Shown piece after piece: positions 10,301 to 49,257 of a stretch of DNA of 64,000 nucleotides; within the stretch, counting starts at the first letter, position 1, and every line of letters begins with the position of its first letter. A program made the position numbers and the translations under genes. Source of the stretch: Ophelia neglecta. Taxonomy: Eukaryota. The stretch spans positions 99,882,001-99,946,000 of the forward strand of contig OZ260664.1 of assembly GCA_965285935.1 (NCBI GenBank). Direction: 5' to 3'. Below the pieces are notes generated by a model, which was given only the letters and a program-made list of their open reading frames with translations, did no database searches and was not told the origin of the DNA.

Positions 10301-13300
10301 ATTATTTTCTCTTCTGTATGCATAGACTTGAAATCATACACTCCATGTGTTGCCCAGGCTGTATATGTCTAATTTAAAAAACTGGTGTTAAGTCATTTTA
10401 AACTTAATCTTAATTTATTAACTATGTCAATATTACATTTTAATTTATGATCTTACCAATTGTTGAGAGAGTTAAGATCTTGGTAATGTTCAAAGTTGAA
10501 AATAACTCTCCCCCTCCCTCCCCGCCGCCTCTTTTTTTAATATACTACATGTATAACACTTGAATTATAGATATAAGAGGTGAGAAAGTGGTTCACCATA
10601 TTTCATTAGTTTGAAAACCAGAAATTTGCAACTCTCCCAACAGTTTAATTTTTTTTTATTGTGGCCAGTCTTCCGTAATCAGTCATCGGTTGTATGTAAG
10701 TGCATACAATATGTCTACCTTCCTGAGAGAAGTGAAAACAATATGAAGACTTAAAGGAGTTAATTAGGACCTTAACATGAGTTATTTGATGTCTGGATTA
10801 TTGATTATTCTTTATTTTATATCTCAGGCCAGAGTTAGTTTGGTCCTTGCCTATCTGTACAGACTGGAGGCCTGGCTGACCCAGTGACCTGATGTGTCTG
10901 GATTGTTAATTATTTTTTATCATATTTCAGGCCAGAGTTAGGATGGTGCTTGCCTACCTGTACGCTCAGCTGACCCTGTGGGCTCGAGGGAAGTCTGGGG
11001 GTTTACTAGTCCTAGGATCTGCAAATGTGGATGAAAGGTAACTTACCTATAAGTGTGAACCAAGCCAACAACTAAATGATACAATTACAAATTATATCAC
11101 TTTTTTTGTAATTATAGATATATAGTAACACTATGATATATATCATGTCACTTGTTACCTACATGTACCATATATAGGGTCTCGTGGCTGGGGCACCCAG
11201 TATCGCGGTGTTTAGATGTCAGCCATTTTAGTTATCAGCCATTTCTAGTATTTACCAGTGTATTGATAACGTGAATATCCTTGTGTTCCAGTTTACGAGG
11301 CTATATGACCAAGTACGACTGCTCGAGTGCCGATGTGAACCCGATAGGAGGAATTAGTAAGACAGATCTGAGACGCTTCATACTCTACTGTACTGACAAG
11401 TTTGGATGGACCGCACTCAAAAAGTAGGAGAGCAATTAAATAGGGACTAATTATGGGAGCAATAAAGTTAGAGAGTTGTCAAGGCTGTAAAGATAAATAC
11501 GTTTACCTTACCTGTGGTCACTGAGCTTTTTCGGTTATATCATAGCCGATAAAAAGTATTTACCTGCAGTTGCCCATAAAATTTTGTGTTTTATCCAACG
11601 CTTGCAAAGAGCTGGAATTTACTAATTTTAGTTAGGGCAAGAGAAGCCAAGAAAGGTAGAACCAGAAATGTGCACATATTTTCTGTCACATGCATTAGGG
11701 CTTGACCACCAAAGTGTGGCCGAGTGGTTAGGGTGTCCGCCTCGCAAGTGGGAGATCGGGGTTGGAACCACGATCGCGTCAAACCTAAGACGTAAAAATA
11801 GGTACTGATAGATCCCATGCCAGGCGCCTGGTATTTCGGGGGTAGTATCAGGACTGGTCAACCCGGTGTCAGTATAATGTGACTGGGTGGGGTTCCCTGT
11901 CTGGTGTCTACGGCAGGTACTCCAGTGAGGCAGCATTCTTAAGATGGCATTGGGCCCACTGTCACAAGTAGGCACCGTGGCGATATGACGCATAAGTGTT
12001 GAAAGCCACGTAAAACCCCAAACAACAACAACAACAACATTAGGGCTTGAGTCTAGCAAAAGTGACTAGTTTATATAGTAATATAGTCACAAGCAAAAGG
12101 ACTTAACTTGATAAGAGTGAAGGGTTTATACTTTTGTACATGACCAAGTGCCACTGTGTGGTTTGACATCTTTATTAATGACCATGGGCAACTGTTTTTT
12201 TGGGGGGTGGGGGATAGGGATGGGGAGGGGGTTACAATAATAATATACCAAGGGCCACTGTGTTCTTTGGGTTTATAACTATATAAATAACCAAGGGCCA
12301 CTTTGTCATTTGGGTTTATAACTATATAAATAACCAAGGGCCACTTTGTTATTTGGGTTTATAACTATATAAATAACCAAGGGCCACTTTGTTATTTGGG
12401 TTTATAACTATATTAATGACCTAGGGCCTGTGTGTTCTTTTGGTTTTATTCCTGTATAAGGTACAATAATGGCCATTGTGTTCGTTGGTGTATACCTTTA
12501 TGTATTACATTTTGCTACAATCTTAAACACTCGGAAGAAGGATTTATGCCAAAAGGCCTCAGTGACAGCCCAACTTGCCCTAGCTCAAAGACATAATGGC
12601 CCTCATGATAAATCTAATCCTGTCCAAAGTCTGTCTTTTGTTATATTATACAAGCATATTTTCTAAGTGCCTGTGTTGGGTTTATAGGACTTCCACATGA
12701 CATTAGTGATAGGTATTGTCTTGTTGTAGGATCTACGCAGCCCCTCCGACTGCCGAGCTGGAGCCTCTGGCTGACGGACAGATAGCGCAGACGGACGAGG
12801 TGTGTCGAGGCTCATCATGTTCAATTCAATGCAATTTTAATTGCATGATATTCACTATTTTAATATTCACATATACATATTAACAGAGAATAATAAGTTA
12901 AGATCATAAATTACACTACATGAATAATTTGATAAAGTTGGGTGAGAAGCTTTAAGGCCCATATACCCCAAGGAACATAAAAAAAATTATTCCTTAAAGT
13001 AGTATTCACAATACTGATTACCTCATGTTAAATTTATTATCTACTTTCCTGATTTGTATTTTCCATAGCATGTGATGTCTGCTACCTACATTCCTTTTTC
13101 GTTTTCTCAAAAGCATATGATGTCTGTTCTGTTACCTGCATTCCTATTTTGTATTTTCCACAGCATTTGATGTCTGTTACCTACAATCCTATTTTGTATT
13201 TTCCACAGCATTTGATGTCTGTTACCTACAATCCTATTTAGTATTTTCCAAACCATGTGATGTCTGCTACCTACATACCTATTTAGTATTTTCCAAACCA

Positions 13301-16300
13301 TGTGATGTCTGTTTACTACAGTGAAACCTGCCTTAAGGACCACCTCTATAATAAGACCACCTTTCAATTCAGACCACTAATATGAGGACCATGATGTATA
13401 CTTTCTATGTTAAATAACCTGTCTAAACGGCCCACCTCTGAAATCAGACCAGTATTTTCCAGTCCTTTGGGTCTTAATTCACAGGTTAATTCACAGGTTT
13501 CACTGTATATTCCTGTTTCGTATTTTCCAAAGCATGTGAAGTCTGCTACCTACATTCCTATTTCGTATTTTCCACAGCATGAGACTCTGTTACCTATATT
13601 CCTATTTTATATTTGCCACAGCATGTGCTGTCATCTTCATTCCTGTTTCGTACTTTCCACAGGAGGACATGGGGATGACGTACGATGAGTTGTCCGTTTA
13701 CGGCCGCCTACGGAAACCTGGGCGCTGTGGTCCTTACAGCATGTTCTGTAAACTGGTCTCTCTCTGGAGCCACAAGTGTACGCCTGCCGAGGTAAGTGTA
13801 CACCTACTGAAGTAACATCCTAGACAACAGTATTATAATAAAACTGGGGACTTCTCATTTTTGTCTTAATAATCAAAAACAATTTCTAGGAAAGAATTTT
13901 ATGACTGTCTACTTGCATATAGTTCAGTTTTAAATTGTTTGATAGTAAAATTGAAGGTTTTTTATTAACAGCAGGGGTGCGGAGCCTGCTGGAAGCTAAT
14001 TCCGAGATTAGGAAACAACAAAAGACCTATATAAACCTGCCCCAACCCTTCCCTAACCCTAAAATAACCCCCAGTAGTATCCCTAGCCTTACTGATGATA
14101 TTTTGCTTCTTACCACTCGGATATACCCATGACCTCTGCAACCACATAGCCTCTGCACATCTGCATTTAAGTAATAGCCCAATTGAATATGTGAGATACT
14201 TCAAAGTTGTGGGTTCAACAGTATTCTTGCAATGTTGTGTATTTCTGTCATTATTTTTCAAGCACTAAATAATGAATTAATATTGGCCTTTATAGAATAC
14301 TCCTTTACTTGTAACTTAGGTCAAGGCCCCTTACAATAATGATTTTTTTAGAATATATATATCACACCTATATACAAACAGTGTACAAAGGCTCTCTGGG
14401 CTTTCAGCCACTAACAGTCCTAGGCCCCAGGGCCTCTCTCACCCTGAGCAGCCACATCTGGGCACATCGGGGAGCCTAACAACTCCAGGTGGTTTGGGAG
14501 GTACCACCTTTCCGAAAGACGCTCCATGCCTGGGCCTGGGATTATACCTCGGTTATCAGAGTGGCAGTGGGACATGTACGGACTGTACTACTCCTCCCTC
14601 TATAACTCAAAACTTTAAAATAAGCTTGGGATTAAAGCTGGTGGACTATGACAAGCAGATAACTTTTCTTTGCAATTGCCCTGAGGGCAAGTAGCACCAG
14701 GAAACTACTTGCCCTCACCATAGGCTTACTGTCCCAAAAATATTTGTACATATAAAATATACAAGATATCCAACAATCGGCGATTTGGGGAATTTTAGCA
14801 GGTTGCCCGGCGGGAAGTTATTAACTAAAACCTTTGTGCCCGCAAGCAGATTTGAGGTGCCCCGGGACGTCGGGCAAAAGTTAGTGTAGACCCCTGTTAT
14901 GACAAGCAGATTTTTCTGTTAGCTAAGATTATCACATGCTTGTAGCCCAGTTTGCCAATGCCTCTGGTTTTACAATTGGCACTCCTGCAAATACAAAGTG
15001 AGAAAATTATATTATATTATAAATATTATTGTAGTACATGATCAAAATTGTGCCATCCTCTCCCGTGTCCAGGTGGCCACCAAAGTGAAGCATTTCTTCC
15101 GATCGTATGCTATTAATCGACACAAGATGACAGTGGTGACACCTGCCTACCACACTGAGAACTACAGTCCTGATGACAACCGTTTTGACCATCGTCAGTT
15201 TCTCTACAACGTCATGTGGCCATGGCAATTCAGAGAGATCGATGCAGAGGTAGGGCTTTTAAAAAAATGCTGTCATTTTGCAGTAATTACAGGGTATTTG
15301 TTTTTAAATCATATTTATGGGAAATAGTTAAAGCAGGTTAGGAAAACAGTAGATGCTAAGGCAATCATTTTTAGTTGTTTAGTGTATGAAACTTTTTCAG
15401 AAACTATTAGACAAGGCAGGGGGAAAGGAAATTCTTATTGGTGGTTTTAAGAAAAAATACTAAAACAGCTTGATATAAAGGAACAGATGATGTGATACAT
15501 GATTATTGAATATATTTACTTTCTAATTAAAAAAAATATATAGTATTAACTTAGGTTGAGGTGGTTTAGAACAAGCTAATGTCTTCTGGCCAGATATATC
15601 TTGCACTTATTCCATCAGGCAGGATTAAAATAAACAATTCCTCATTTTAATTTTATTCCACTTGTTCCACAAAATTATTGATCAGGGCGGTTGTGTAAAC
15701 CAATGAATTAAAAAGTGTTGGTCTAAAGGCTTGCCAATCAGTGTACACCTTGAGTTACTGGAGACAGACATTGGGACAGGAGACTGAATCGCCAGTAGCC
15801 GGCTGACAGATACCAGCCTGTCTTTGAGTGTTATTGCTGTAGACTACATACCTTTTCTGACATCTGCAGTAGTCGTACATTTAAACTTTAATGATACAAA
15901 CTTTTAATTTCAATGATTTGGAGCCCAGCAGGATATTTCTGTAACTAACAACATAAAGGGTATGCTTAATGCTAGGGATTCCCTCTACTGTATTTCCTCT
16001 AAGTATTCATGCACTTTTAATTCATACACTCCAGTTTCTGATTATTTTAATTTCGTTTCAACCTCTAATTATTAGTACACTTATCTGATACCCTATTATA
16101 CCGAAAACTAGTAGTCAAAATACCGGTAGTAATAATTTTGTTTTTGCCTCTAATTATTCATATCGCTGGAATTTGAAATAATTTTGGTGTCTAAAATATT
16201 CGAGGAATTACAGTAGTTCAAATGAGTTCATATGTAGAACAAGATAATTGCGGAACACTGCTGTGAGGGTCTATAATACATGAACAGGTTATGTACATTT

Positions 16301-18362
16301 GAGTGTAGAGATAATTATTGTCATTCTTGTTAGGTGGATCTTGATTTTTTTCAGGTTAAGAAACTTGAAGAAAAACAGAGCAGATTAGGGCAACCCAGCT
16401 CCAGCCAATCCACCCCTAACCATAGCTCCCCCCACCCTGGTCCTGGACAAGGAGGCAGTGGAGGCAGAGGAGGTGGCAAGGGCGTGTTTGTAGCAGGGGG
16501 TATCATGGGAGAAGGGGTCCAGGTGGGCATCAGCCCTCCGGATGTGAACATGGACCTTAAGGAAGACACTAATAAAGCTATGGATCTTTCTACCAGCGGC
16601 CGTAATACCACATACCACACTTCAGATGTTAAAAGAAACGGAATGGATGAAACACAGAACATAACTCAAAGTCACACCGATAATGGGAAACTGTCCAACA
16701 TTGAATTAGACGTGTTAGTTCCAGGAGCAGACGCCTCTATGTCTGTAGGCCGTGTGTTTGACCTCCATGCTGATGGCTCGGTCACTGACAAATCTGGAGT
16801 GCCAAACACCGAGTCTATTGCCACCAGTATTACTAATAGGTATATATTACTACATTAACTTGTACTGACTGACTGATCAATGAATCAGTCAAAGAATTGA
16901 AAGATTGGTTGATTAATTTATTTATTGAATTATTGAATTATTGAATTATTGATTGGATGGTTGAAGGTCTTATCACGATCAAATAAGTAATTAGGGCACA
17001 TTTTTTTGGTAATAAATAAGGTTTTGGCTTACAATTGAAGGGTGTGGGATAGATGTCGTCACATAAAAGAGAGTCTTGGGATGAGGGGGTCCAGGGCTGA
17101 GGGGTCTGGTGCAGAGGGAGTCTGGGAATGAGGGAGTCTTGGGCTGTGGGAGTCTGGGGTTAAGGAAGTCTGAGGCTGGCACTCGGCGGTCTGGGGCTGA
17201 TGGGGTCTGGGGCCGCTTGAGTCTGGGGCTAAGGGGTGGGATTGAGGGGGTCTCGGGCTGAGGGGACCTCTAGCTGAGGGATTCATGGGCTGAGGGAGTC
17301 TCACCATCTGGTTGTCTTGAACAAGTTGTAGATACAGAGGTTGGGTAGGTATCCATGCAACAACCCCCCCTCTTACCCCACTCCATCCCCTTCACCCCAC
17401 TCCACCCCATGATTTTACCATCTGCCAGAGACCCTAATGAGTACTGTGAAACCCTTATATTTGGTGGCCCTTAATATGCACGATTTTGGTGCTCTAATTA
17501 TTTTGTGCCCCTTTAATTCTGCGTTCCAGGTTTTAGGGACCTATTAAAATCCCTATGTCTAACATGCAAAATCCATGCCTAGCTTGTCCTTTTTCAACTA
17601 TTCACGATATTGTTTGGGCTTAGCTGCTCTGTTTCACTTAAATAAACTAGTTTAGAAAACATTATCAAAAAATGATCATAGCATTAGTTGGCAAATTGTT
17701 TTCTATGTGTGCTTGAACAAAAGGAGCATTTTCCTAATGAATTATCCCTAAATAGTAAGACCCTCTGTCTATTTTATTCTATGGTAGGCTAGCTTATTTG
17801 GCCAATCAGATAGCCAAATATTTTTGTCGGTCCTGAAAGGTCTAGCACAGCCGGCAGGGGGCGCCACTGCATGGGGAAGTCCTATTACATCACTGCAACC
17901 TTTAGAGCTTCTGTCAAAGGCTTCTTGCAGGTCTGCAGGACCTTAATTTTTCGTGAGCCCTTTAATTTTGCAGTTTTGACCCTGCTTTGGAGATTTGCAA
18001 AATAAAGAGCTCAAAAAAATTAAGCGTTTTACAGTATAAACATATTGGATATTAATGGTTAATATTTCTTATGATAATACTTATCGTTTTCTATTATCAG
18101 GTTTGACCACGAAGGAATTGATGATGGACCGACATTTGAGAACACACTGGAGGCGTGCATTGTATTCAACAATGGTAAAGCAGGCGGTATGGAAACCCCA
18201 GCTTCTGATTTTATTCCAGTGATTACTGCTCATAGTAGTACCAGCCAGGGTGGTTCTGCCTTCAGTAGTATAGGCAGTGATTGTGGCAAAAGAGGAGGAC
18301 AGCATCTCATCAATGGACACAGAGAGAAGACGCCTTGGAGCACCTCCATACTCTCAAACTGA
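1380..18362 (+). CDS. NADSYN1: Glutamine-dependent NAD(+) synthetase, 5'-partial (first coding exon upstream of the window)
   Basis: Phase-consistent GT-AG exons: 1380-1440, 1991-2107, 2995-3048, 3404-3545, 4462-4550, 6425-6542, 7249-7380, 8000-8196, 8366-8517, 9225-9393, 10051-10186, 10931-11037, 11292-11423, 12730-12799, 13663-13791, 15073-15249, 16355-16839, 18101-18362. Motifs: nitrilase-fold triad GPELE / RPK / EICEELW, P-loop [59 protein letters not shown]. The last exon is less certain; without it the frame stops at 16858. Confidence 0.95.
1625..1803. mobile_element. MITE with TA target duplication (Tc1/mariner-like), TIR CAGTGAAACCTG
   Basis: TA-CAGTGAAACCTG...CAGGTTTCACTG-TA with internal CAGGTGACC repeats. 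Related copy at 22563-22741. Confidence 0.85.
2570..2740 (+). repeat. G-rich low-complexity repeat (GGGGCT motif)
   Basis: Clustered G-runs and GGGCTGAG-like units, similar to 17075-17305. Confidence 0.5.
3187..3302. repeat. Short tandem duplication, ~47-53 bp unit, about 2.3 copies
   Basis: AAAATTACTATACTACT occurs three times, the first two followed by TGGTCAAT...TGTTTAAACC. Confidence 0.8.
4012..4111. other. Assembly gap (100 N)
   Basis: Run of N in a NADSYN1 intron. The flanking exons join in phase, so no coding exon appears to be missing. Confidence 1.
4687..4865. mobile_element. MITE with TA TSD, TIR CAGTGAAA(C/T)CTG
   Basis: TA-CAGTGAAACCTG...CAGATTTCACTG-TA. Same family as 13319-13505 (opposite orientation) and 22428-22560. 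Confidence 0.85.
5082..5885. mobile_element. Non-autonomous hAT-like DNA transposon
   Basis: TIRs TAGGGGCGTAAGGAT / ATCCTTACACCCCCA. Flanking 8-mers GTCTCGTG / GTCCCATG match 6/8, consistent with a decayed 8-bp TSD. Confidence 0.6.
7469..7868. repeat. Tandem duplication (~105 bp unit, 2 copies); the first copy is interrupted by a MITE
   Basis: GGGTCTAG...TCTGGACCTAGAGCCAGCTCTCTGTCCTCTGTCACTACTGCCTC.GGGAGCAGAGCAGACAGCAGAGGCTGGGGACTGGGTCTAG is present twice. Confidence 0.85.
7535..7712. mobile_element. MITE with TA TSD, TIR CAG(T/G)GGTCCCTG
   Basis: TA-CAGGGGTCCCTGCGATG...CATCGCAGGGACCACTG-TA. Family member at 51348-51522. The empty site is visible in the adjacent repeat copy. Confidence 0.9.
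8569..8730. repeat. Minisatellite, 28-bp unit, ~6 copies
   Basis: CAGGAAATTTCCAAGAAATTTTCCCAA(G/A) repeated. Confidence 0.9.
10788..10963 (+). repeat. Tandem duplication of a NADSYN1 intron/exon boundary (duplicate acceptor 103 nt upstream of the real one)
   Basis: ...ATATCTCAG|GCCAGAGTTAGTTTGGTCCTTGCCTATCTGTAC (10828) versus ...ATATTTCAG|GCCAGAGTTAGGATGGTGCTTGCCTACCTGTAC (10931). Confidence 0.9.
11706..12037 (+). mobile_element. tRNA(Ala)-derived SINE, full length
   Basis: A box TGGCCGAGTGG 11717-11727, anticodon-like CGC 11743-11745, B box GGTTGGAACC 11760-11769, (AAC)n tail. Perfect 13-bp TSD CATTAGGGCTTGA at 11693-11705 and 12038-12050. Confidence 0.92.
12240..12450. repeat. Minisatellite, 43-bp unit, ~5 copies plus degenerate flanking copies
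   Basis: AAATAACCAAGGGCCACTTTGTTATTTGGGTTTATAACTATAT. CCAAGGG occurs at 12248, 12291, 12334 and 12377. Confidence 0.9.
13040..13662 (+). repeat. 45-bp tandem array ending in the real acceptor of NADSYN1 exon 13663-13791, interrupted by a MITE
   Basis: Unit TTCCTATTT(C/T)GTATTTTCCACAGCATGTGATGTCTGCTACCTACA. The 15-aa periodicity of antisense ORF 13107-13367 reflects it. The last unit supplies TACTTTCCACAG|GAG. Confidence 0.85.
13319..13505. mobile_element. MITE with TA TSD, TIR CAGTGAAACCTG
   Basis: TA-CAGTGAAACCTGCC...CAGGTTTCACTG-TA. Reverse-complement homologue of 4687-4865. Confidence 0.88.
14660..14896. mobile_element. Truncated hAT-like DNA transposon fragment
   Basis: Right end ...GGGCAAAAGTTAGTGTAGACCCCTG with internal TGCCC/GGGCA repeats. 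Flanked by the direct repeat TATGACAAGCAGAT. Confidence 0.45.
15988..16213. mobile_element. MITE with TA TSD, TIR CTGTA(T/A)TTCCTC
   Basis: TA-CTGTATTTCCTC...GAGGAATTACAG-TA. Confidence 0.7.
17075..17305 (+). repeat. G-rich degenerate tandem repeat (GGGCTGAGGGG(A/G)GTCT-like)
   Basis: About 12 degenerate ~17-20 nt units with G-runs, which give rise to Pro/Ser-rich spurious antisense ORFs. Confidence 0.75.
17444..18034. mobile_element. Non-autonomous DNA transposon, TA-CTGT...ACAG-TA ends
   Basis: TA-CTGTGAAACCCTTA ... TAAGCGTTTTACAG-TA, with subterminal CCCTTTAATT repeats at both ends. Confidence 0.65.
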
Positions 18363-20561
18363 TCTGAAAATAACAAGTAGTATATGGACGTTAACTACTC
18401 ATATGACATAGCTGACTGAATCTGAGAAAAGTACATCTGAACATGGTTGGCTTGAATGTTTTGACTTGGGGAGATTAAGGCTTGAGGAATCAATCTAGTG
18501 GCAAGGAGTGGGGAGTCTCTCCTGGACAGGGGTCCTGTTGGCAAAGTTCCCAAGACCCCATTTGATAGAAGTCCACATATATATATATATCTTTTATTCC
18601 TCTACTTTTTGGAGAGAGCATTATGTACATTGATATAGACACACTACAAACACAACTGGTACAAGCATCAAGCAGTCCTAGGAATACCTCCAATTCAAGT
18701 ATTTGATATTAAAAGAGTACAATTTGAGATATACGTTTATGTACAATACTACCCAGGGTAACATTGATTAAAGCTGTAGAGTTTACAGATATAGGGGTAT
18801 TTAACTCATGATTTGCAGTTTATGTGCTACCATAAATCAGTTCACCCTATCCCTTTTTACCAGGCGGGCCTACAAATTGCTTGTACAGTGTAATATAATT
18901 ATATGGGAAACGCTATGGTACGAACTACAACATAGGAGGGTATTACATGGGTCTTCATGGGGTCCGCCCCCCAAAGTACATACTTTACAGACTGCATGAA
19001 GTAAAATGTACTAGATTGCTGTGTTCTCTAGTCTAGACTGGCCAGTGTGTGGAAACACTAAATTATAGATATTTAAAATAGGGCCGGCAAATATGAGAAA
19101 TGATGTGTATGATTTGTTCTGTACGAGTTTATGGGTAGTATTTAGGAATGTTTGACATTCAATGTTTACAAGCCAGGTGATATTAAAGACCTGACTAGCC
19201 GTCTTCTGTTGCTGTCAAACCTAACAGTGCTTGTAGTATATAGAGTGCTATGGATATTAGAATTCATTTAGTGGGTCAAGCAAAAGGCATCAGTATTTAC
19301 ATATGACATATGATATTGTGTCTAGAAAGAGTTTTAACATTTCTGTCGGAGAATTTGGCAAGTTTTTGACATTTTTTAATAGTATACATCGTGTTATTCT
19401 ATATTTGTTGATTTCAGTTACCTAGTGGTGGAATCCTATGAATAGTAGTATTTATGTTAAGCTTTGAGCTTCCAGATTGAAAATTAGCAAAAATTAGGAA
19501 AAAAAATGTTTGTCTGCGTTTAAATTTGAGTTTTTACAAAAAATGACACTTTATGGGGGTTTTTTTTGTATTAATACCCCCAAGATGTAGGTACATGTCA
19601 AAACAATATACAGTTCCGCTCGCGTATTCCCTACATGTTCGGTGTCCGTAGTACGAAGACCGTACGCGCTGAATAGGCACACTGAAATCGACCACGGACA
19701 GCACCCGTCAGCGTATTAGGGCGTATTATTTGCAGAATTTTAGATTCTTTTAGATTTTGTTCTCATTAAAAGTCATTAGGATGTGAAAATTTGGGAGGGG
19801 TGTGGGGTGGTACAAGTCAAATCTTTGGGGGGGGGGGGAAATAAACCTGCCCCCCCCCCTCCCCCAAGCACCTTCTCTGTTGCAATTTGCAGAAACAAGA
19901 GATGTTTGGAGCCTGTTTTTGCCCAAGGCCTGGTTTCTAGGAGCGGTCATAAGTTTATGGATTAGATTAGCTGAGACTGCATTTATCGGTGTTTACATGG
20001 CCCAGAATTAAGTTTAAGACTAAAATGGCTAGGTTTAGACCAAATGCAGGTTCCAGTAACCCCAATTAGCAAGTTTAGACCAATTAAGCACTTTAATTTT
20101 TAATCAGAACTATGACTGCTTCGTGCGCCCTGTGAACTTCCCTATAAATTTACAAGTGAATTTAAATGACCTCTTTGAACCCTAAATGCCATCTAGAACT
20201 TCTCATCAACATTCCAATTATGTCATTACAACATGTACATGAAGATGGAAAATTTGATTTCTGCAACAAGTTTCTTTTATGTATATGAATATGTATATGT
20301 GGTGCTTTTTGTTCTTTGCCTTATGATGTAATTTTCTTTGAATTCATAATTGTTAAAATATTATTGTGAGATATTTTTCATTATTTTCCAGGTATGCTTA
20401 ACAGCTATATTTGTTATACCTCAAGTATTAATTCTACAAATATTGTCTAAACTATTGTACCTTGTATGTATTTGCTAAACAAAATGAGAGCTATGTGTTT
20501 TTTATATGATATTCACATGCCGTTTGAGTTGTTTTTTAAGTTAATTGAAAACTTGCTCTTA

Positions 20562-21086
20562 CACCCCAGTCACACAGACGGTCGGGCTTAAATTGGCACC
20601 CAATCGGCCTGATGATATTTCATTTCTCGCTGTTTTGATCGGTTGTCATAAGTGAATTCATTTCTTGCTTTTAGTGTGACTGGGTATCGGTGGTAAATAA
20701 TTGTTCATTCAGTCAAACTCATTGCTAGTAGGTGACATTTCGCCTTTTAATTCTCAGCTTTTTTCATCGGTGGTTAGTATCAGTTCATCGGTGCCTTATC
20801 AGTGGCTTATCGGTGGCCTATCAGTGATATCGGTTGTAGACAGATTGTTAATCGGTTATTTGTGAGTAAGACAGACATTTTCACTGATCGAGAATTTAAA
20901 CACGTTTAAAAATCCCTATCGGTAGTTTTTCCCGACGAAACTCACCTTTACCCAATAGGATTTGATAGGTGGAAAACAGGCGACCAATAGGTGATATCGG
21001 TGGTAAATAGGTTTGCATCGGTCCCCGCCCTAATCTGGCTAATAAAACTAACGATCAATCACCGATGGCTCTGTGTGATGGGGGTG
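20562..21086. mobile_element. PIF/Harbinger-type MITE
   Basis: TIRs CACCCCAGTCACACAG / CTGTGTGATGGGGGTG, 3-bp TTA TSD on both sides, internal ATCGGTG repeats. Confidence 0.8.
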
Positions 21087-22427
21087 TTAGATTGCATGCT
21101 GTAAAGTCATAGTTTATTAATTTTGATTAATGCTCTTATTATACTTATTATTATACTGTGGTATTTGAAGAGCAGCATGGATAATTGTAAACCGTATTCT
21201 CTGTAATAATGATCACGTCGCTTAATTATTTATGTGGTAATTTTATGCTTAAAACCCCCAAAAAGCTAGTGAAAAGGGTCTAAGGGAGAGAAAAAAAGGA
21301 GGGTGGGTGCTTATTACAAAGACTACCATATTCATACTATTTAAGCTGTCTGAATAAACAATAATACCCCTTGAAATAAAGTAAACTGTACCAGAAACTC
21401 ATCCTAATAACATTATTACGCATTATGTCTGGGTTAGGCTTTTTCCAAATATTGTCCTCAAAGAGGGGTGGAAGCCAATTTATTTCCAAATCCCCCTCCT
21501 CCTCCCCCCCCCCCCCCCTCCTCCAGACATAGACAAGTATAAAGTCCTTCAACCCTATGAAATATATAGAGAAAATCACCAACCCCTCCACCTTCAGCAC
21601 CAGACCTGGAATATGCCTACCATCCCTTCTTGTGGGCAATTTGTGCAAAAATCATAATAGGCAAAGTGGTTAGTGTACAAATAATGTATTTTGCTATATT
21701 ATAATGAAATGTTTCATGATGTATTGCCATATGTACATAGCGGTAGAAAGCCTTATTATTATTTGGTTACATTACAATATTCAAATCTTGGTTTGCATGC
21801 TTAATGAGTAGGAATAAATTGTTGTATTAGTTATATAAAAGTGGCCATTTACTATATATTACATTGAAATGAGTTACTGTATTACATTGAATTGAAGTAG
21901 ACCATTATTTTCCTGCTGGTACACCTTTAAATTTGATTTGTATGATGAACTATCGTAAAGTGTGTATTGATCTTCTTTACCTGGGCCTTTATTAATAGGA
22001 AAAAGGCTGAGTAATGCATCATTCCTTGCTTAGAATGAGTCGAGGCTGGTCAGTGCCGAGCATCATTTCATGCAATGAATGATTAGCTACAAGGATTTTC
22101 ATCGACATAAATCCCCCATAGTACAAGGAATGACCACTTGATGTTGACTAAGGTGATAGGAATGCTGAGCTTGATCAAAGAGCCTTTTGGTGGCTATTAA
22201 TATTTCCTGCCAAATAAGCCAATATCTCAACATCTAATCTAAATGGTTAAAAATCTCTTCTTGTAACTTTAGGGGTTAAAAATCTCTACATCTAACCTAT
22301 GAGATTAAACAGAAAGGAAGTTCAATGCCAGAGTTAATTCACTGGCTATTGGACTTTTTCTCTCTTTGTTATTTAGATGTAATGCCCGGCCAACCTGACA
22401 GCATTCTAGTAAGGAAACTTACTACTA

Positions 22428-22838
22428 CAGTGAAACCTGTCTTAAAGACCACCTGTCAATTCAGACCAATAATATGAAGACCAAAATGTACATTTTAATG
22501 TAAAATAACCTGTGTAAACAGACCACCTCCAACATCAGACCAATATTTTCCAGTCCCTTGTACAGTCAAACCTGTGTTAGCGGTCACCTGTGTAATAAGG
22601 TCACCTGCTTATTAAGGTCATTCTTTTTTAGCCCCTTCTCCAATTAGGACCATGTAACTTAACCTGTCTAGTCAGGTCACCTTGCTAATGTGGCCACTCC
22701 TAGCCAGTCCCTTGTCTGACCTTAATAGACAGGTTTCACTGTACATTGAAAGTGTACATTATGTTCTTCATATTATTATTGGTCTGAAGGTGACAGGTGG
22801 TTGGAATATGGAAGTGATCTTTTGCAGGTTTCATTATA
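22428..22838. mobile_element. Nested cluster of TA-target MITEs
   Basis: Family-A 5' part 22428-22560, then a complete family-B element 22563-22741 flanked by TA, then an inverted partial family-A copy ~22742-22838. Confidence 0.75.
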
Positions 22839-41059: not shown

Positions 41060-41249
41060 ATTGGAAGTATAATTGGTATATCTTCGAGAGAATACACACC
41101 GAAGACACTGCAGCCGACTGACGAACGTCCTTGTCAAAACGTTGACCTTCACCTTCAAAACGAGAGTATAGAGATGTTTTATAAAACAAATTGGTAAGCG
41201 TTCTTTATTGGTAAAAAAAGCTATATAAAATATGCCAAATTATTTCTGG

Positions 41250-41480
41250 TAACTTACACATATAAATTTTACCTGAATCAGTTGTTCTATGTTTATCAAA
41301 CATCAAAATGTTTACGAGAGTATATACCTGCATTTACCCTCTGTTATCGCCCAGGCTCGTGAGAACTACGTTTTATATTGTTGATTGTTGTTTCTCTCCC
41401 TCTATCTCACCGCCAACGAAACTGACAACATCTCGCACTGTTCTGAGAAGTGAAAGCACCCCGGTAAGGTAACGAAACGA
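41250..41480. promoter_or_regulatory. Probable bidirectional promoter between PGAM and AAR2
   Basis: The genes are head-to-head. Minus-strand donor-like sites lie at ~41255-41330 and a plus-strand donor-like CCG|GTAAGG at ~41463. The AAR2 ATG is preceded by an acceptor (TTCCAG, 43726), so its first exon is upstream. GCTCGTGAGAACTAC motif at 41355-41369. Confidence 0.5.
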
Positions 41481-43404
41481 AAGTTCAGAAACGCTTTTAT
41501 CAGGATATAGTTTTAAAATGAAATTTATGTGCCTAGTAGTACCAAGAGATAAATTATGATAACGAAGTGGTTATACGCACGCCGGGAAACGCACGACCTG
41601 GCGTGCAGTTATACGTTTTCGTGGCATTTCCTTTGGTTGTGGGTGGAGTAAAATTAACTTGTGTTCTTTTTAACGACAGATATGGCAATGTAGTAGGCCA
41701 TCCAAACAAAATAACTGTGAAAATAACCTCGAGCGACTTGGCACCCGCCCAAGTTTACTGGACACCCTCTCACCTTATGGCCATCCCTTAATGATACTAA
41801 TCTAATAGGACCTACAGAAAACAATCCTCCTAAGTCCTAAACTTACAGTACGAATGTCGGCCTACTAATATGTAAAAGATATCGCTTACACAACCTGGGC
41901 GCTGGAATAGTGAAGAAAATTTATTACACACATGCTGGCGCAGCTGGTGTGGGTATAGTAGAGAAAAAGTACTATCATTATCACTTACGATGGCATTACC
42001 TGTAGCACGGTGTTGGATCAGCTGGGCGTCTGAGCGACGAAAAAGCACGTTTGAGCATCTATGTGAGTAGGCTAATACGAACGAGCGATAAACAAGCGCA
42101 TAATCAGCGACATTCAGCACAGGCTCCCATACGTTTTACGCCATAGAGAGGAAAGATGAGCGAGTAAGATTATATTTTCTTGTGCATTCGGCGCAGGAAG
42201 TATTTATATCCACTAACAAATTTCAAATTAAAAGGTTTTCTGAAGATAATTTCTGTATGTGCCTGTCAAATGCATCGTGCATGCGGCGGGCTTCTCACGA
42301 GAGCGTACATGTTGACGCTGTGTTATCATTATATGTCGTTTGTCTTTCGAATTTACATGGCCTTTTGGCCTGATTTAGTAGGATAAAACATTCCTGGGCG
42401 AATCCCCTCCTGAGAAAAATTTCTCTCCTTAAATAATTTATAACTGTTATCAACAACATAAACATTACGTCAAGCCGACTCGTATAGCTATATTATCGAT
42501 GTGTTCTAAACCTAAACTATCACGACCTTTTATGATATTAACTATGCATGTGCACCATACGGCACCATACTGAATCGCGCCTTTTCACGCCAGACGCACA
42601 TGCACATGAGCCCGTATGCTGTTTAAAAGAGGTTTGAAATATTAAGTTAATTTGAATTTCCTGTAATATTCCCCTTTTGTAATAATCTACGCATCAATTT
42701 TCCCCTCCTGATGAGCTATGGGCCCCTTCCCCCTCCTTTGAAAAAAAGCTCTGGTATGTCTTCAACTTCTACTTCAAGTTGATAGTCAGCCCAGGTGTTC
42801 TATCTTGTCAGAGATTTTCATAGATTGTTGTTATAATCAATGGATATTATTATCAGTTACTTGTGCATACCAGTAGGCTAACTCAATTTAACATGGATTG
42901 TAAAATAGGCTAGCTTAACTGCTGACTAGTGAAGTCAGAGCAGGGCTATTGAACAAATATTATCATCATATGCCCTGCTGGCCTGAATATATAGGGTTGA
43001 TTAATAACATTAAGACAAGTAGCAAAATTATTATAATAATTATTTTGATTACTATTGACAATTATAACCCTTAGAAATGACTGAATCTCAGGTATTAACT
43101 CCGTACTTATCTATAAAATGCATATATTTTTTAGTTGTTAAAAATTGCGACTTAAATATTGTGTAGCGTAACAAAGCATTTGTAGCCAGGTGTCATTTTG
43201 AAGTTTTACTAATTATGAAATAAGCTGGATGAACCTGGAGAAAAATGAGGTGAACATGGGGAGAAAACTTGGACATTTTTTTGCTGGGAGATACTTTTAA
43301 AAACTTAGAGACTCCTGGAAAAACCAAGAGACTTGAGAGCCCGGTGAGGTGTTGACTCTTCATCGTACTGTAGAAGGCTACATCCCCATGGTCTACAGTA
43401 GGGG

Positions 43405-43575
43405 TCTAAGGCCAAGGGTAAACAGTTGGGGTCAAAGTCATACTAGCAGGGAAACAGTAGGTATCAAAGGCATGGCAAGGGGCTCAAGGTGTTTAAGGCC
43501 AAGGGGAAACAGTAGGTGTCAAAGGCAAGGCAGGGGAAAAGTGTCAAAGGCCAAGGGGAAACAGTAGGTGTCAAC
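43405..43575. repeat. Degenerate minisatellite, ~26-bp unit
   Basis: AAGGCCAAGGGGAAACAGTAGGTGTC-like units repeated ~6 times. Confidence 0.75.
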
Positions 43576-43728
43576 AACATGTATTGGCTGAGACATTAGC
43601 GGAGTTGAAACCACAACTCACGATCTTCATCTTTTTCTTCAAGGTGGGGCTACAAAATGTCCAAACAAAATTTTCCTTCTAATTATTTCAATTATTAACC
43701 TTAAATTGCCACATGTGGTATTCCAGAT

Positions 43729-46700
43729 ATGGCAACTTCAAGGGTTGAAGTAGTCACCCAGGACCCTACTAAAATGGATCAAGACATGGCTCAGCATTTA
43801 TTCAAAGAGGGCGCCACTTTTGTGTTCCTTGATGTTCCCATAGGAACAGAGTTTGGCATTGACTGTAACACTTGGGAAGTCGGACCCGAGTTCAAAGGAG
43901 TAAAAATGATCCCCCCTGGTGTCCATTTTGTTTATTACAGGTGGGTATTATTAGCAATTTTCTCTGCATGGTGGCAGCAGGGGTTACGTTACTGGGTATA
44001 TGTTGCTCATTAGTAAGATTAGGCCTACTATACATAGCTACCAATCACCAATGATATTTTAATGGCCCTGTATGATACATATGAGGAATCAAGTAAAATT
44101 GCAGCAAATCTGCAAGCAGTATAAGTCAGTAAGTCTCTCAAGGCAAAATAATTTTAAATGACCATGTACTTATCCAAACAGGCATTATGAGAGAACTAGG
44201 CACATGCATGTCCATTTAGTAAGCAAATCTGCTTTTTCTGTAACAATTACATGAAGTGTATAAAAAGGTGTATCCAAGGTGCCGAGCTCCAGCCTTGGGC
44301 TCTAAAAATGTTAAAACTAGTTTAATGTTGGCTCTTATTACGGCCATGTACCATACATACACCAGAAAATATAAATGTTTATGTCTCTAGAATTGGTTTG
44401 ACTTAATTTGACAAACAGAAACAATTGACCAAAGTGCGAAACTTTAATGAATTCATGACTCTATTTAATAATTAATTCATTTATGATGTAATAGCTGTTG
44501 CCTGCCTTGTCCCAAGGCTATTCTTTTAGTTTGATCAGGTGCAAACTGGCAAATTTTTCCTTTCCCCATTGATAGCATTGCTGCTTTTTGAAGCTCCATT
44601 CCAGGCTTTTAAAGTATTACTGTTTTTTTTGGTCTTTTTAAGCACTTAAGTGTATGCCAAATACAGCTTAGTCAAATATTAACTCAACCCTTTTCCTCCT
44701 GAAACTTAAATACATTTTTTGTGTACTAGTACATGTGCTTAAAAATAGTGTGTGTACATGTACTCAGGTACTGATATCAGTGATTGAGATAGAGAAGTGT
44801 GTACCAAACATACAATCATGGATGGAGGTGAACATGCTTAAGCTAAACCAAGACAAAACTGAAATTATGTTTTTCTGTTCGAGGCAGAATAAGGTCATTC
44901 CAGAAGGCTTGACCTTTACTCTAGGAGGCTGCAAACTCTGTCAAAAACTTAGGTTGCTTGTGGGATCGATCACTCACAATGGAGAACGATGTGCGGGCAA
45001 AAATAAAATCATGTTTCTGTCAGCTCAGGCACATTAGCCGTCTCCGGTGGTACATGTCAGAGGACGTGTCTAAAATGCTGGTGCAAGCCCTGGTAGTATC
45101 AAGACTGGACTACGGAAATGTTTTATTAACGGGGCTATCCAAATGTCTTCTCCAGAAAATTCAGCGTGTCATAAACTTTGCAGCATGTCTGATAACTTTC
45201 ACACCTCAACGGCAGCATATCACACCTGTATTCAAACAGCTTCACTGGCTGCCGGTCAACCGCCGCATAGAATACAAGGCTCTCCTGATGACTTACAAAG
45301 CACTCACTGGTCTGGCTCCTAGGTATATTCTTGATCTCCTTGATGTGTACCAGCCGCCTCGCCCTTTACGATCAAGTAGTAAATTGATACTTACGGTTCC
45401 TCACATGAGAACCGAAACTTAAAGGCGGCGCTGTTTCTGATATATTGCTCCATGCCTTTGGAACAAGCTGCCGGAGGATATCAAAACTGCCAAAACAATT
45501 ATGTCTTTTAAGAAGCAATAAAAAACACATCCGTCCTAATTAGAATACATCTAGTGCCATATTCTTAAAAATTTCTTTCTTTTTGTCTTATATTTTAAGT
45601 TTGTAACTTTTAACAAGGACCAATTTTAGCTTAATCTAGTTACTACTTTAATCTGAGTTGCTTGTAATAAAACTGTTAGATGCTTTTTATTTTGTAAAGC
45701 GCTTAGAGCTATGTATAGGCGCTATAGAAATCAATGTATAATAATATTATCACAGGTAGAACTGGGACTGGCTGCTACATTACACAAGCCAATAAGTGTA
45801 TTGAGAATTCTCTAATTGCACTTTGTGAGTTGAATTTGAATACCTATGGCTCCAGAGTAAGTCCATCTGAGACTTATGTTGGTATAGTGCTATCCTGTTG
45901 ATCACTTTGAAAACATAATTGCATTACCTTAGTTGACTTAACTAGCAATCACTACATGTAGTCCAAAGTGAGTACATTTGGCTGACACTGGAGTATATCT
46001 TACAATGAAGCTGTTAATTACATCTCTAGCCAATGCCAAATTCTCTTGACTGCCCTTTAATCTAACACATGAGCAGATCACGAGATCTGCTAAGTAAGAT
46101 GTGTTTGGTGAGCAGATCATTTGATTTTCTCATGAATTTGCTCACTGCCACTTTATAAGAAGTGTCTAGTTTGCCAGATGGCGTTAAGGCCGGTTCACAC
46201 TGCCCAAAAGTCGCGTAAAAGCATGAATCACGCACAAATTTCGAGTCTTACGCGATACCTCCGCGATACATCCGTGATTTGCGCATTTCATCAGTTTTTC
46301 TGACGTGGAGCCTCCGTGGTTGTCCGTCGATGTTTGCGGGATCGGTGCTTTACGCGATTCCAAGTTTTGAACAGCTCAAAACTCGTTTTCACGTAAGAGT
46401 TTTCGCAGTATTGCGCTGTTTTACGTTATTTTTGCATAGTTTGCATAGCTCTTGCGCGGACAATGCGTAAAATATGCGTGGAATATCAGTGATCGTTCGC
46501 GAAACTGTTGCCGCAATCGCGTTCGTCGACGACTTTCCACTGACGATTAGCAGACATATTGCGCAAGTCTCGCGCCTGTAACACGTACGTTTCACTAAAA
46601 ATCACCGAAGAAATTAACTTATACGCAGTTCAGTAGTGATAGTACGCAGATTATGCGTGGTTTTCCGTGAATCTTACGTGGCACACAACCACGTATTCGC

Positions 46701-49257
46701 CCTGTTTGGGGCCTTTGCGTGCCTATGCGCTGACGTGCGTGGTTTGTTAGTAATTTTTGCGTGATCCTTCCGTAGTTCTGGCGCAATTCATCGGTGATAT
46801 ATCATCGCGTACATCAGCGAAAATGATCAAATTCTCGACGGACAAGCACGCACAACCAAATGTTTATGCGTGATTCATGCGTTTACGCGACTTTTGGGCA
46901 GCGTGATCCGGCCTTTAGCTGATAATAAAAGTAAATAATAAATATGTAGATTGTGACTGTAGTGTTGTTGTGACTCACTTCATTGACTTTAATCATAATC
47001 CTTAAAACTCACGTCATGAGTATAGAAGAACTCGTACTCGAGTACATCCAGGATATCTTGTACTCGTACTTGTGTGATTGGCCAGTACTTGTACTCAAGT
47101 ACATGAGCCCTGTACTCACCCCAACCCTGGACCATCACTATACAGGGTGGATAGTGTTAAAAAAAAACTACCACAATAGTACATAGAGGACATGTGTACT
47201 TTTAACAGAAAGATTGGCCAGCCTAGCCAGTGCAGCGTCTCGTCTTTCCTTTCCGTTCATTAAGATGTCATCACTAAAGCTGTTGTCTTCTTTCTTTCCT
47301 TTTACAGAACTTGTTGCAATTATTTCATTTTTTTTCAGCAGAGTCAAGATATGTTTTTGTTATATTTGTCAAAGATGAACAAAAGAATGACCTGTGTCTT
47401 ATCCTGCTTACAAATGATATCAAACTTGTGATTGTTGTGTTGCAGTGCTGTAGGTAGAATTGATCACCAGGTGGCACCCAGAACAGGCTTTTTCTACAAC
47501 TTCAGACAGCGAGAAGTTGTCCTTAAGCGTTGGGATAAGCACACCGAAGGTATGTTTTGGTATTGATACCAATTGGGAAAAATCATAGCTCAGTGATAGT
47601 GTACAGGAATAAGACATAAAGGAAAACTAGATCATAGATTCACTGATAAATTTTATCTATACTTTCCCAGTCAGGGGTAAATCTTTAAATCAGCGATTGG
47701 GGTGGGAAAGGAGGGTTGTATATGTGGAAAAATTAAGCATTTATTGAAGAATTAAGTTGTATCTGTTTTAATACTAATATCTCCGGAATGTTCACACATA
47801 TGGGAAACTATTTAACTCTTCAGATATTAGAGATGAAGTAGTCAATGCTGAGGAGCTGGAGAGACTAGAATCTAATAAACAAGAATTGGACAGGAATCTC
47901 GGAGTGTACCCCTATGAAACGTAAGTAATCAGACCTGAGACATAAGTCATCTAGTAAACAAGAACTGGCCAGGAATCTTGGAGCATACCCCTATGTGATG
48001 TAAGTAACCTAATGAACTTGAACTGGCCAGGAATCTTGGAGCATGAACTGGCCAGGAATCTTGGAGTGTACCCCGATTAGACGCAAGTCATTTAATAAAC
48101 AAGAACTGGCAAGGAATTTAGGAGTGGACCCTTATGAGACATTAGCAATGTATACTTCAGTCTTGAAACTAAAGAATATGTTTTCAATTCACTCCCAAAG
48201 GCCTAGAAAAAAGGGATTAAAGATTCTGCTAAAGGTGCCCCTTACTTTTCTGCCTATGCCTCAATAGATTTAGCCATGTAGTTCTCCCTATTGTAGTCTG
48301 ATTCACAATAATTACCTTTCTTGATTTTGATATATTATTTTATTTATTACATTATCAGTTGATATGTAAACCAAAAATGTAGTCATTATAAATGTCAGAT
48401 TACCTTGTACTCAGTTTGTGAATATTGCAATGTTTTCAGAACTGACTGTAGCATTATTTTGGTAGTAAATCTATCTACAATTTTCCTTCAAATTCAGCTA
48501 TAAGAAATGGATGTCCCTAACCAGTCATGTGACTGAGGCGTTATCACATCGCCTGCAGCCTGTGACTGGAAAGATCTACGCAGTTACTCAGCTAGTCTCT
48601 GAACGCAGCACCACCCAATCACGGAGGGAAGAGGCAGACAGACAAAAACACAAAATGGAGACCGATTCAGCAGATTCTGATAAAATGAATTTTAATTCTG
48701 ACAACAGATTGCCAGAATTAAAGACAGTTGAAGGGACTGAGGTAAGATTCACCACAATTCCTCGCAAGAAGTACCCGGACGGCGCATCGCCTGCTGACAT
48801 CACCAAATACAGTATAGATCACAGTTATGTTCTTCAGACCCTTCTAGACACTGTATATAAAGATGACTATAACCAGATTCTCGGGGAACTTCAGTTTGCC
48901 TTTGTGTGCTTCCTCTTTGGACAAGTTTACGATGGATTCAACCAGTGGAAGCAGCTGGTAGCTTTGTTGTGTTCATCCGAAGAAGCGATGGCCAAACATG
49001 AGGATCTATACAACAACTTCATATCAATGATGCACTACCATATTCGGGAGATTCCCGAGGATTTTTTCGTAGACATTGTATCACGGAACAATTTTTTGGT
49101 GGACGTTTTGCATGGATTTTTTGAAAATTTGCTTAACAGTGAAGTAAGTGGCAGCCTCAAAAGAAGAGGTATTAAATTCAGGGAACATTTGGAGAAGAAG
49201 TTCAAATGGGACTTCACTTCTGAACTTGAAGAATATGCACCTACAGTTGTGGAGTAA
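43729..49257 (+). CDS. AAR2: Protein AAR2 homolog, U5 snRNP assembly factor (390 aa)
   Basis: Exons 43729-43940, 47446-47549, 47824-47920 and 48498-49257 total 1173 nt in phase. Motifs: [103 protein letters not shown]. Confidence 0.95.
44770..45750 (+). mobile_element. 5'-truncated, decayed L2/CR1-group LINE in an AAR2 intron
   Basis: [13 protein letters not shown], then a frameshift, then [43 protein letters not shown], with premature stops. 3' end TGTAAAGCGCTTAGAGC...GCGCTATAGAAAT and a TAA-rich tail. Confidence 0.9.
46187..46914. mobile_element. PIF/Harbinger-type non-autonomous element, CpG-rich
   Basis: ~50-bp TIRs AGGCCGGTTCACACTGCCCAAAAGTCGCGTAAA.GCATGAATCACGCA and its reverse complement at 46864-46914. 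TTA TSD at 46184-46186 and 46915-46917. Confidence 0.88.
47020..47130. mobile_element. hAT-like terminal fragment with GTACTC repeats
   Basis: Repeated GTACTC/GAGTAC, ending in GTACTCACCCCAACCCTG. Confidence 0.45.
47870..48141 (+). repeat. Tandem array derived from the 3' end and donor of AAR2 coding exon 3
   Basis: GAA(T/C)TGG(A/C)CAGGAATCT(C/T)GGAG occurs five times. Real donor at 47921; copies end in GTAAGT (48000), GCAAGT (48083) and ATTAGC (48141). Confidence 0.9.

What the first reader, a model, noticed from the sequence alone, without database searches (positions are those of the whole stretch)
10788..48141. Recurrent splice-junction-derived tandem arrays: four independent decoy splice-site runs in three genes
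Seen in sequence: four unrelated tandem repeats are each made from the host gene's own exon/intron boundary. They are a NADSYN1 acceptor (x2, 103-nt offset), another NADSYN1 acceptor (45-bp unit, ~10 copies), the GPCR donor (32 bp x6) and an AAR2 donor (x4-5). In each case the functional site is the exon-proximal copy and the extra copies extend into the intron. Many extra copies have changed splice signals (GT>GC, GTAAGT>GTTAGG/GTTATT, CAG>AAC). The copies whose frame I traced (GPCR, AAR2, the 103-nt NADSYN1 duplicate) give a frameshift or premature stop. Four hits among roughly 60 coding junctions looks high. Inference: either a junction-targeted duplication process, or a repeat-tuned unproductive-splicing (NMD) dial whose copy number could vary between alleles. 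It could also supply raw material for intron sliding or gain.
Basis: partly seen in the sequence, partly recalled or inferred. Interest (0 to 1): 0.78.

Follow-up and report, generated by a model that had tools for sequence, protein, structure and literature searches.

The report
Splice-junction minisatellites in three genes
Five introns in three genes of an invertebrate carry tandem copies of their own exon/intron boundary; the repeats are real, but they are an already described kind of repeat ("mirage" minisatellites), and much of their frequency here is what random duplications in short introns would produce.

Summary
All four arrays are real. They are single-locus and sit on functional splice junctions of NADSYN1 (two acceptors), a class-C GPCR (donor) and AAR2 (donor). 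I found a fifth on another NADSYN1 donor (13774-13815). Alignment to human proteins shows the exon-proximal copy is the functional site in NADSYN1 and AAR2, and Pfam profile continuity shows it for the GPCR. Every decoy would give a frameshift or early stop.

This class is already known: amphioxus "mirages" and the human F7 intron-7, IFI6, CBS, LMNB2 and PDGF minisatellites. This scan has already reported it at many other places in this same genome.

The "four of 60 looks high" claim holds only partly. The window has about 40 mapped junction ends. A null that accounts for intron length expects about 1 junction-spanning array, and 4 are seen. An independent 189-kb sample (kinase and myosin loci) gives 4-5 seen against 1.45 expected. 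That is roughly a 3-fold excess and an upper bound, because ancestral introns were probably shorter.

In the nearest available relative the orthologous introns are 76-148 nt and have no arrays. Decoy GT/AG signals have not decayed faster than neighbouring bases. No RNA runs exist, so the NMD-dial idea is untested and has no support. Verdict: ordinary members of a known kind.

The parts
10788..10890 (+). Array 1, intron-side (decoy) copy of a 103-bp tandem duplication. It holds about 40 nt of intron end, a decoy acceptor AG at 10826-10827, and about 63 nt copied from the exon start. Using it would add 103 nt and meet a TGA after 19 codons.
   Evidence: contigs of three runs span it with 0 differences
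10891..11037 (+). Array 1, functional copy (10891-10993) and the rest of NADSYN1 exon B (exon 10931-11037). The exon starts at the residue matching human A487.
   Evidence: (6OFB 441-486 then 487-521)
13024..13298 (+). Array 2, distal block: six 45-bp units, each ending in a pyrimidine tract plus AG. The AG is lost (AAC) in units 5 and 6.
13317..13507 (+). MITE-like insertion that splits array 2. It has 14-nt perfect terminal inverted repeats, belongs to a dispersed family (3 copies in the window) and has very high read depth.
13488..13662 (+). Array 2, proximal block: four units. The last one (13618-13662) supplies the functional acceptor (AG at 13661-13662).
13663..13791 (+). NADSYN1 exon E (43 codons, human residues 590-632), flanked by array 2 upstream and array 5 at its donor.
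13774..13815 (+). Array 5 (not in the finding): 20 bp x2.1. Copy 1 is the last 18 nt of exon E plus the donor GT (13792-13793). Copy 2 carries a weak decoy donor at 13812 (+20 nt, frameshift).
29430..29621 (-). Array 3: six 32-bp units, each 20 nt of GPCR exon end plus 12 nt of intron. The exon ends at 29602 and the functional GT is at 29601-29600. Decoy hexamers in order away from the exon: GCAAGT, GTAAGG, GTAAGT, GTTAGG, GTTATT.
47874..48146 (+). Array 4: about three units of 79-83 bp, with an internal exact 25-bp duplication, built on the end of AAR2 exon 47824-47920 plus its donor. Donor-like hexamers: 47921 (GTAAGT, functional), 47942 (ATAAGT), 48000 (GTAAGT), 48083 (GCAAGT), 48141 (ATTAGC).

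Best explanation
These are ordinary locus-specific minisatellites of the known 'mirage' / F7-intron-7 type.

How each arose (inferred): a tandem duplication, by slippage, unequal exchange or end-joining, copied a 20-103-nt segment that happened to include a splice junction. Some then grew by further unequal exchange.

Why the functional site is always the exon-proximal copy: only that copy leaves the mRNA unchanged, so selection forces this outcome. For donors, experiments in the human F7 gene also showed that the most upstream of identical sites is the one used. The extra copies end up inside the intron as unproductive pseudo-sites and drift neutrally.

Why they look frequent here, for three ordinary reasons:
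- This lineage has many intronic minisatellites.
- Duplications inside coding exons are removed by selection.
- The introns were short when the duplications arose, so a large share of the duplications that survive in a gene must include a junction.

Shown here: anatomy, uniqueness, which site is functional, unproductive decoys, absence in a relative, no special decay of signals. Inferred: the duplication mechanism, neutrality, and silence of the decoys in RNA.
For: - The arrays are real and unique in the genome.
- Five arrays have unrelated units, different unit lengths (20, 32, 45, about 83, 103) and different copy identities (about 75-89%), so they are independent events of different age. 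Array 2 predates a MITE insertion.
- The junction lies at varied positions within the unit. This fits random breakpoints.
- The exon-proximal site is functional and decoys are all unproductive.
- Splice-signal positions in decoys are no more diverged than their neighbours (35/186 vs 115/482, p=0.18).
- The orthologous introns in the nearest available relative (L066, synteny NADSYN1-PGAM-AAR2) are 76, 148, 132 and about 140 nt with no arrays. L066 has one tandem array in 20.7 kb, against 25 in the 64-kb window.
- Geometry: with such intron lengths, the chance that a duplication includes a junction is 0.27-0.75 for these unit sizes.
- The same class is published for amphioxus Adh3, globin, TnC and PGBD5 (PMC3087553, PMC3902484) and for human F7, IFI6, CBS, LMNB2 and PDGF (PMC1557585).
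Against: - Even the intron-aware null leaves about a 3-fold excess: window 4 vs 1.05 (P=0.009, post hoc), independent sample 4 vs 1.45 (P=0.04), or 5 with a marginal case (P=0.007).
- Arrays cluster within genes: three in NADSYN1, two in one myosin.
- Three or four of nine or ten arrays begin or end exactly at the splice site, which is rather more than random breakpoints predict.
- Triple AGGTAAGT repeats give 784 matches genome-wide against 97 for the reversed motif. By distinct arrays on contig C1 this is only 8 against 5, and the single motif is slightly rarer than its reverse (29,000 vs 33,557).
- Silence of the decoys in RNA could not be checked.
Confidence: 0.66

Rival explanations
1. 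A junction-proximal mutational bias. Tandem duplications would arise more often at or next to exon/intron boundaries than elsewhere in introns, for instance through transcription- or chromatin-linked breakage at exon edges. Junction arrays would then exceed what geometry predicts.
For: There is a residual excess of about 3-fold in both the window and the independent sample. Under the simpler uniform null the figures are window 0.53 expected vs 4 seen, and sample 0.95 vs 4. Several arrays start exactly at GT or end exactly at AG. Non-spanning arrays also lie within 30-75 nt of junctions.
Against: The excess is an upper bound, because intron length at the time of duplication was probably shorter than I assumed. 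Numbers are small and clustered by gene. The junction position within units is variable. By distinct arrays, the donor consensus is only 1.6 times its reversed control on contig C1.
Confidence: 0.22
2. A regulatory decoy array, the 'NMD dial'. Decoy sites would capture some splicing events, yield transcripts with premature stops, and so tune expression in proportion to copy number.
For: Many decoys keep strong signals: GTAAGT at GPCR unit 3 and at AAR2 48000, and seven of nine NADSYN1 decoy acceptors keep the pyrimidine tract plus AG. All would be unproductive. In human IFI6 and CBS the two nearest pseudo-sites are used (PMC1557585).
Against: No conservation: the arrays are absent in the relative. 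Decoy signals show no sign of constraint or of selection against them. F7 pseudo-sites are silent despite being identical to the authentic site. Amphioxus RT-PCR shows normal splicing. The arrays sit in unrelated housekeeping and receptor genes with no common logic.
Confidence: 0.07
3. Assembly artefact: the repeated copies were created by mis-assembly.
For: Short-read contigs break inside array 2 (13051-13518).
Against: Copies differ from each other by 2-25% with indels, which artefactual duplication would not produce. Array 1 is reproduced without any difference by contigs of three runs. A MITE interrupts array 2. The same kind of array recurs at independent loci.
Confidence: 0.02

Closest known systems
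Amphioxus 'mirage' minisatellites (Adh3, globin BflGb6/BflGb9, troponin C, PGBD5)
   Same: Tandem duplications whose unit spans an intron/exon boundary, at either the 5' or the 3' end of an exon. Units are 10-160 bp. Many copies keep AG/GT. Normal splicing uses the authentic site. They have been proposed as raw material for intron gain (PMC3087553, PMC3902484).
   Different: The host here is not amphioxus. Its AAR2 is only 52-53% identical to Branchiostoma, 56% to Lingula, and 68% to one unnamed ENA assembly. Copy-number or somatic instability, shown for Adh3, could not be tested. Array 2 copies only the intron side of the junction.
Human F7 intron-7 37-bp VNTR, and the IFI6 (6-16), CBS IVS13, LMNB2 and PDGF intron-4 minisatellites
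   Same: The first monomer spans the exon/intron boundary, so the donor is reiterated downstream. The authentic, most upstream site is used. Pseudo-sites are functional in principle but silent, or only the nearest one or two are used (PMC1557585).
   Different: The human cases are all donors, whereas two of the five arrays here are acceptors. The human arrays are near-identical and polymorphic. These arrays are 75-89% identical and their polymorphism is unknown.
Intron gain by tandem genomic duplication (Rogers model; human tandem-array introns, Zhuo et al. 2007; variable internal tandem repeats at exon-intron boundaries, PMC2812944)
   Same: Duplicated splice signals in tandem that could create new introns or alternative splicing.
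   Different: No new intron has been created here. All the affected intron positions are old, shared with human and with the relative. I could not read the Zhuo paper itself, only citations of it.

Membership tests
Junction-spanning ('mirage' / F7-type) minisatellite | Head-to-tail tandem copies at a single locus, not a dispersed element | tested here: met
   TRF and alignments; each array matches only itself in the 762-Mb genome
Junction-spanning ('mirage' / F7-type) minisatellite | The repeat unit includes the exon/intron boundary: the splice signal plus exon sequence | tested here: met
   Arrays 1, 3, 4 and 5 contain 63, 20, about 47 and 18 nt of exon. Array 2 contains only the intron side, namely the pyrimidine tract plus AG. 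Its post-AG part is not similar to the exon (p=0.32), so for that array the feature is only half met.
Junction-spanning ('mirage' / F7-type) minisatellite | The authentic, exon-proximal site makes the normal mRNA | tested here: met
   Shown by protein contiguity with human NADSYN1 and AAR2 structures and by Pfam profile continuity. Not shown by RNA, since no RNA run was available.
Junction-spanning ('mirage' / F7-type) minisatellite | Copy-number instability or polymorphism | not testable with these tools
   Only three DNA runs of one sample hold the region. No length variant was seen at array 1, and contigs break in array 2.
Regulated unproductive splicing (AS-NMD element) | Use of the alternative site in RNA, rising when NMD is blocked | not testable with these tools
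   No RNA runs for this organism in the index
Regulated unproductive splicing (AS-NMD element) | Evolutionary conservation of the poison sites | tested here: not met
   Orthologous introns in L066 are 76-148 nt with no arrays. Decoy signals are not conserved above neighbouring bases.
Intron gain by tandem duplication (Rogers model) | A new intron lying between duplicated AG|GT sites at a position absent in relatives | tested here: not met
   All junctions involved are at positions shared with human proteins and with L066

The most novel reading that the evidence does not exclude
In this non-chordate invertebrate lineage, tandem duplications are born preferentially at exon/intron boundaries, beyond what intron geometry and purging of exonic events explain. 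Junction minisatellites would then be a major genome-wide driver of intron growth and a standing supply of spare splice sites.
Probability: 0.2. Interest if true: 0.6.

Novelty: new member of a known kind. Interest (0 to 1): 0.3.

Why it matters
The individual arrays add nothing new in kind. The useful points are three.

- The 'mirage' phenomenon, so far described gene by gene in amphioxus and a few human genes, is common in a second, unrelated invertebrate genome.
- A simple geometric rule explains much of the apparent targeting. The chance that a tolerated duplication includes a junction is about 2u/(I0+2u), where u is the unit length and I0 the intron length at the time.
- The rule gives a quantitative null for a genome-wide test. 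It also shows how short introns (76-148 nt in the relative) can grow several-fold (574-862 nt here) through arrays seeded on their own ends.

Tried and rejected
- RNA evidence. The run index returned only three DNA contig runs of one sample. Laying them confirmed array 1 but can say nothing on splicing.
- Sampling junctions genome-wide through Pfam families. The Pkinase search returned mostly intronless genes. The myosin search was useful. The kinesin and dynein exon lists could therefore not be fetched, and I did not try to obtain those letters by another route.
- Motif counting genome-wide. Match counts are dominated by a few long satellites, and only the first 100 rows are listed, so distinct arrays could be compared on contig C1 only (8 vs 5). 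Inconclusive.
- Dispersed-repeat origin of the units: rejected.
- Exon origin of the array-2 unit: not supported.
- Faster decay of decoy GT/AG: not supported.
- Reading Canestro 2002 and Zhuo 2007 directly: not held. They are cited through papers that cite them.
- Exons were searched one by one by reference. The N stretch near 4012-4111 was left alone.
Full report
**What is in the window**

Pfam scans of exon translations identify four genes. NADSYN1 lies on the + strand at about 4.4-17 kb. A class-C GPCR lies on the - strand, with ANF_receptor, NCD3G and 7tm_3 domains; its 7tm_3 profile is split 2-120 | 122-251 between exons 29602-31836 and about 27830-28342. A phosphoglycerate mutase lies on the - strand. 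AAR2 lies on the + strand at 43.7-49.3 kb. The window is G000:C7:99882001-99946000 of a 762-Mb animal genome.

**The observation**

TRF reports the 45/44-bp array (13037-13320 and 13509-13662), the 32-bp x6 array (29429-29621) and the AAR2 array (83 bp x2.0 with an inner exact 25-bp duplication, 47962-48124). The 103-bp duplication (10788-10890 / 10891-10993) is too diverged for TRF (about 75% identity with indels) but is clear in the sequence and in a pairwise alignment. A register scan resolves array 2 into ten units. Seven of the nine decoys keep a pyrimidine tract plus AG, and two have AAC. The GPCR units read, from the exon outward, GTAAGT (functional), GCAAGT, GTAAGG, GTAAGT, GTTAGG, GTTATT.

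Each array matches only itself in the whole genome, so none is part of a dispersed element. Array 2 is interrupted by a MITE-like element with 14-nt perfect inverted ends (13317-13507). That element belongs to a family with three copies in the window and enormous read depth. The array is therefore older than that insertion.

TRF's 20-bp x2.1 row at 13774-13815 consists of the last 18 nt of NADSYN1 exon 13663-13791 plus its donor GT, followed by a second copy with a weak GT.

**Which copy is functional**

No RNA run for this organism is served, so I used protein contiguity, exon by exon and by reference.
- Against human NADSYN1 (6OFB), the exon before array 1 ends at Q486 and the exon after it starts at A487.
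- The exon before array 2 ends at E589 and the next starts at E590.
- Against human AAR2 (7PJH), the exon ends at the residue before T157 and the next exon continues there.
- For the GPCR, the Pfam profile is continuous across the junction.

In every case the exon-proximal copy is the functional one. This is forced, because any other choice would insert repeat sequence into the mRNA. A script confirms that each decoy gives a frameshift or an in-frame stop.

**Is it an assembly artefact?**

Contigs of three DNA runs (one sample) cover array 1 with no difference, but they break inside array 2. The copies differ from each other by 2-25%, which mis-assembly would not produce. I regard an artefact as very unlikely.

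**Do decoy signals decay faster?**

I compared each decoy with the functional copy. Splice-signal positions differ at 35 of 186 sites and the remaining positions at 115 of 482 (odds ratio 0.74, p=0.18). The GPCR donors alone lean the other way (6/45 vs 6/115) but the numbers are tiny. So 'many decoys have changed signals' is true, but it is what overall divergence predicts. There is no sign of selection for or against the decoy signals.

**Is four (five) more than chance?**

I map about 40 junction ends in the window, not 60.

Under a uniform model, each array is born from a random segment of unit length u, and exonic events are purged. This expects 0.5-0.8 junction-spanning arrays, and TRF detects 4 (P=0.002-0.009). 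But the window was chosen because of this feature.

For an independent sample I used the 60 loci returned by own-genome searches with the kinase and myosin-head families. These total 189 kb in 47 regions, and I mapped myosin exons with tblastn. Among 40 arrays of period 12 or more I found four clear junction arrays:
- a kinase acceptor, 75 bp x3 at 98% identity (C2:120216761-120216988);
- a myosin donor repeated about 6-7 times (C2:90257848-90258017);
- an acceptor array in another myosin (C8:74257249-74257421);
- a donor array in that same myosin (C8:74258346-74258396).

There is also one marginal case (C8:63913242-63913284). The uniform null expects about 1 (P about 0.02).

A fairer null conditions on the intron. 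A duplication of length u that must not disrupt the exon spans one of the two junctions with probability about 2(u+3)/(I0+2u). This gives 1.05 expected vs 4 in the window (P=0.009), and 1.45 vs 4 (P=0.04) or 5 (P=0.007) in the sample. That is roughly a 3-fold excess and an upper bound, because I0 at the time of duplication was probably smaller than today's intron minus the array.

A genome-wide motif count was inconclusive. Triple AGGTAAGT at 18-48-bp spacing gives 784 matches against 97 for the reversed motif. These are dominated by a few long satellites, and distinct arrays on contig C1 number 8 against 5. The single motif occurs 29,000 times against 33,557 for its reverse.

**Comparison with a relative**

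The word-index protein search with the last AAR2 exon found no near-identical protein. The best hit is 68% identical, from an unnamed ENA assembly. Next come Lingula (56%), molluscs and annelids (about 50-57%), and Branchiostoma (52-53%). The host is therefore not amphioxus.

The 43-kb contig of the best hit keeps the order NADSYN1-PGAM-AAR2 within 11 kb, and its NADSYN1 exons are 83-95% identical in protein. The four orthologous introns there are about 76, 148, 132 and 140 nt and contain no repeats. The whole 20.7-kb locus has one tandem array. Here the array-1, array-2 and AAR2 introns are 727, 862 and 574 nt.

The arrays are thus lineage-specific, and together with transposon insertions they account for much of the intron growth. 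If the ancestral introns were that short, the chance that a tolerated duplication of these unit sizes includes a junction is 0.27-0.75.

**Mechanism**

The junction lies at different places within the unit. The exon part is 63, about 47, 42, about 21, 20, 18, up to 12, 3 and 0 nt across the nine arrays examined. The breakpoints are therefore not set by the splice site. This argues against any process that cuts at the junction.

My best reading (confidence about 0.66) is ordinary tandem duplication and minisatellite growth. These arrays are tolerated because the exon-proximal site stays in use. They are over-represented at junctions mainly because exonic events are purged and the introns were short. 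A residual junction-proximal bias (about 0.2) is not excluded.

A regulatory 'NMD dial' (about 0.07) has no support. The arrays are not conserved, their signals show no constraint, and the host genes are unrelated. The best-studied human case shows silent pseudo-sites, although IFI6 and CBS do use the nearest one or two.

**What is known**

[quoted passage not shown] They have also been reported for globin, troponin C and PGBD5 genes, at both 5' and 3' exon ends, with normal splicing and with the same intron-gain proposal (PMC3087553, PMC3902484). Human F7 intron 7, IFI6, CBS, LMNB2 and PDGF carry minisatellites whose first monomer spans the boundary (PMC1557585). Variable internal repeats at exon-intron boundaries have been surveyed in human segmental duplications (PMC2812944). 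My searches found no genome-wide test of junction enrichment.

This scan has already reported the same class at many places in this genome. In one search, 372 notes match 'tandem splice', and eight followed-up cases appear. One agent estimated about a 7-fold excess in another gene. I treated these notes as leads. The term 'mirage' came from them, and I checked it in the papers.

**Verdict**

These are new members of a known kind, of low to moderate interest.

Noticed in passing
   Followed up: yes
window 13317-13507 (also 4840-4865 on the - strand, 22428-22453): A MITE-like element with 14-nt perfect terminal inverted repeats (TACAGTGAAACCTG). It is inserted in array 2, has three copies in the window, and shows read depth in the hundred-thousands.
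   Followed up: partly
window 11690-12040: A tRNA-like dispersed repeat ending in an (AAC)n run, inside a NADSYN1 intron. Contig depth there is about 600,000-1,200,000 against about 20 nearby.
   Followed up: no
L066 (ENA contig, 20.7 kb) versus window 4400-49300: The synteny NADSYN1-PGAM-AAR2 is kept in the nearest available relative, but within 11 kb instead of 45 kb. The class-C GPCR of the window is not in that interval, and introns there are 76-148 nt.
   Followed up: partly
G000 C2:120216761-120216988; C2:90257848-90258017; C8:74257249-74257421; C8:74258346-74258396: Four further junction-spanning arrays found in kinase and myosin genes elsewhere in the genome: an acceptor 75 bp x3 at 98% identity, a donor repeated about 6-7 times, and an acceptor plus a donor in one myosin gene.
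   Followed up: yes
G000 C1:87329866-87330737; C1:114341997-114346367; C2:1872101-1873590; C1:632241-633626: Long satellites (units 36, 27, 35 and 53 bp) in which every unit carries a perfect AGGTAAGT. I could not check whether they start at real exon ends.
   Followed up: no
G000 C1:136-140.5 Mb, C5:111-116 Mb, C9:15.8-19.8 Mb: Large tandem families of intronless kinase-domain ORFs of about 290 aa, with dozens of copies.
   Followed up: no
window 8551-8729 and 11211-11249: Purely intronic minisatellites lying 32 nt after a NADSYN1 donor and about 42 nt before an acceptor. They are close to the junctions but do not span them.
   Followed up: partly
   Followed up: no
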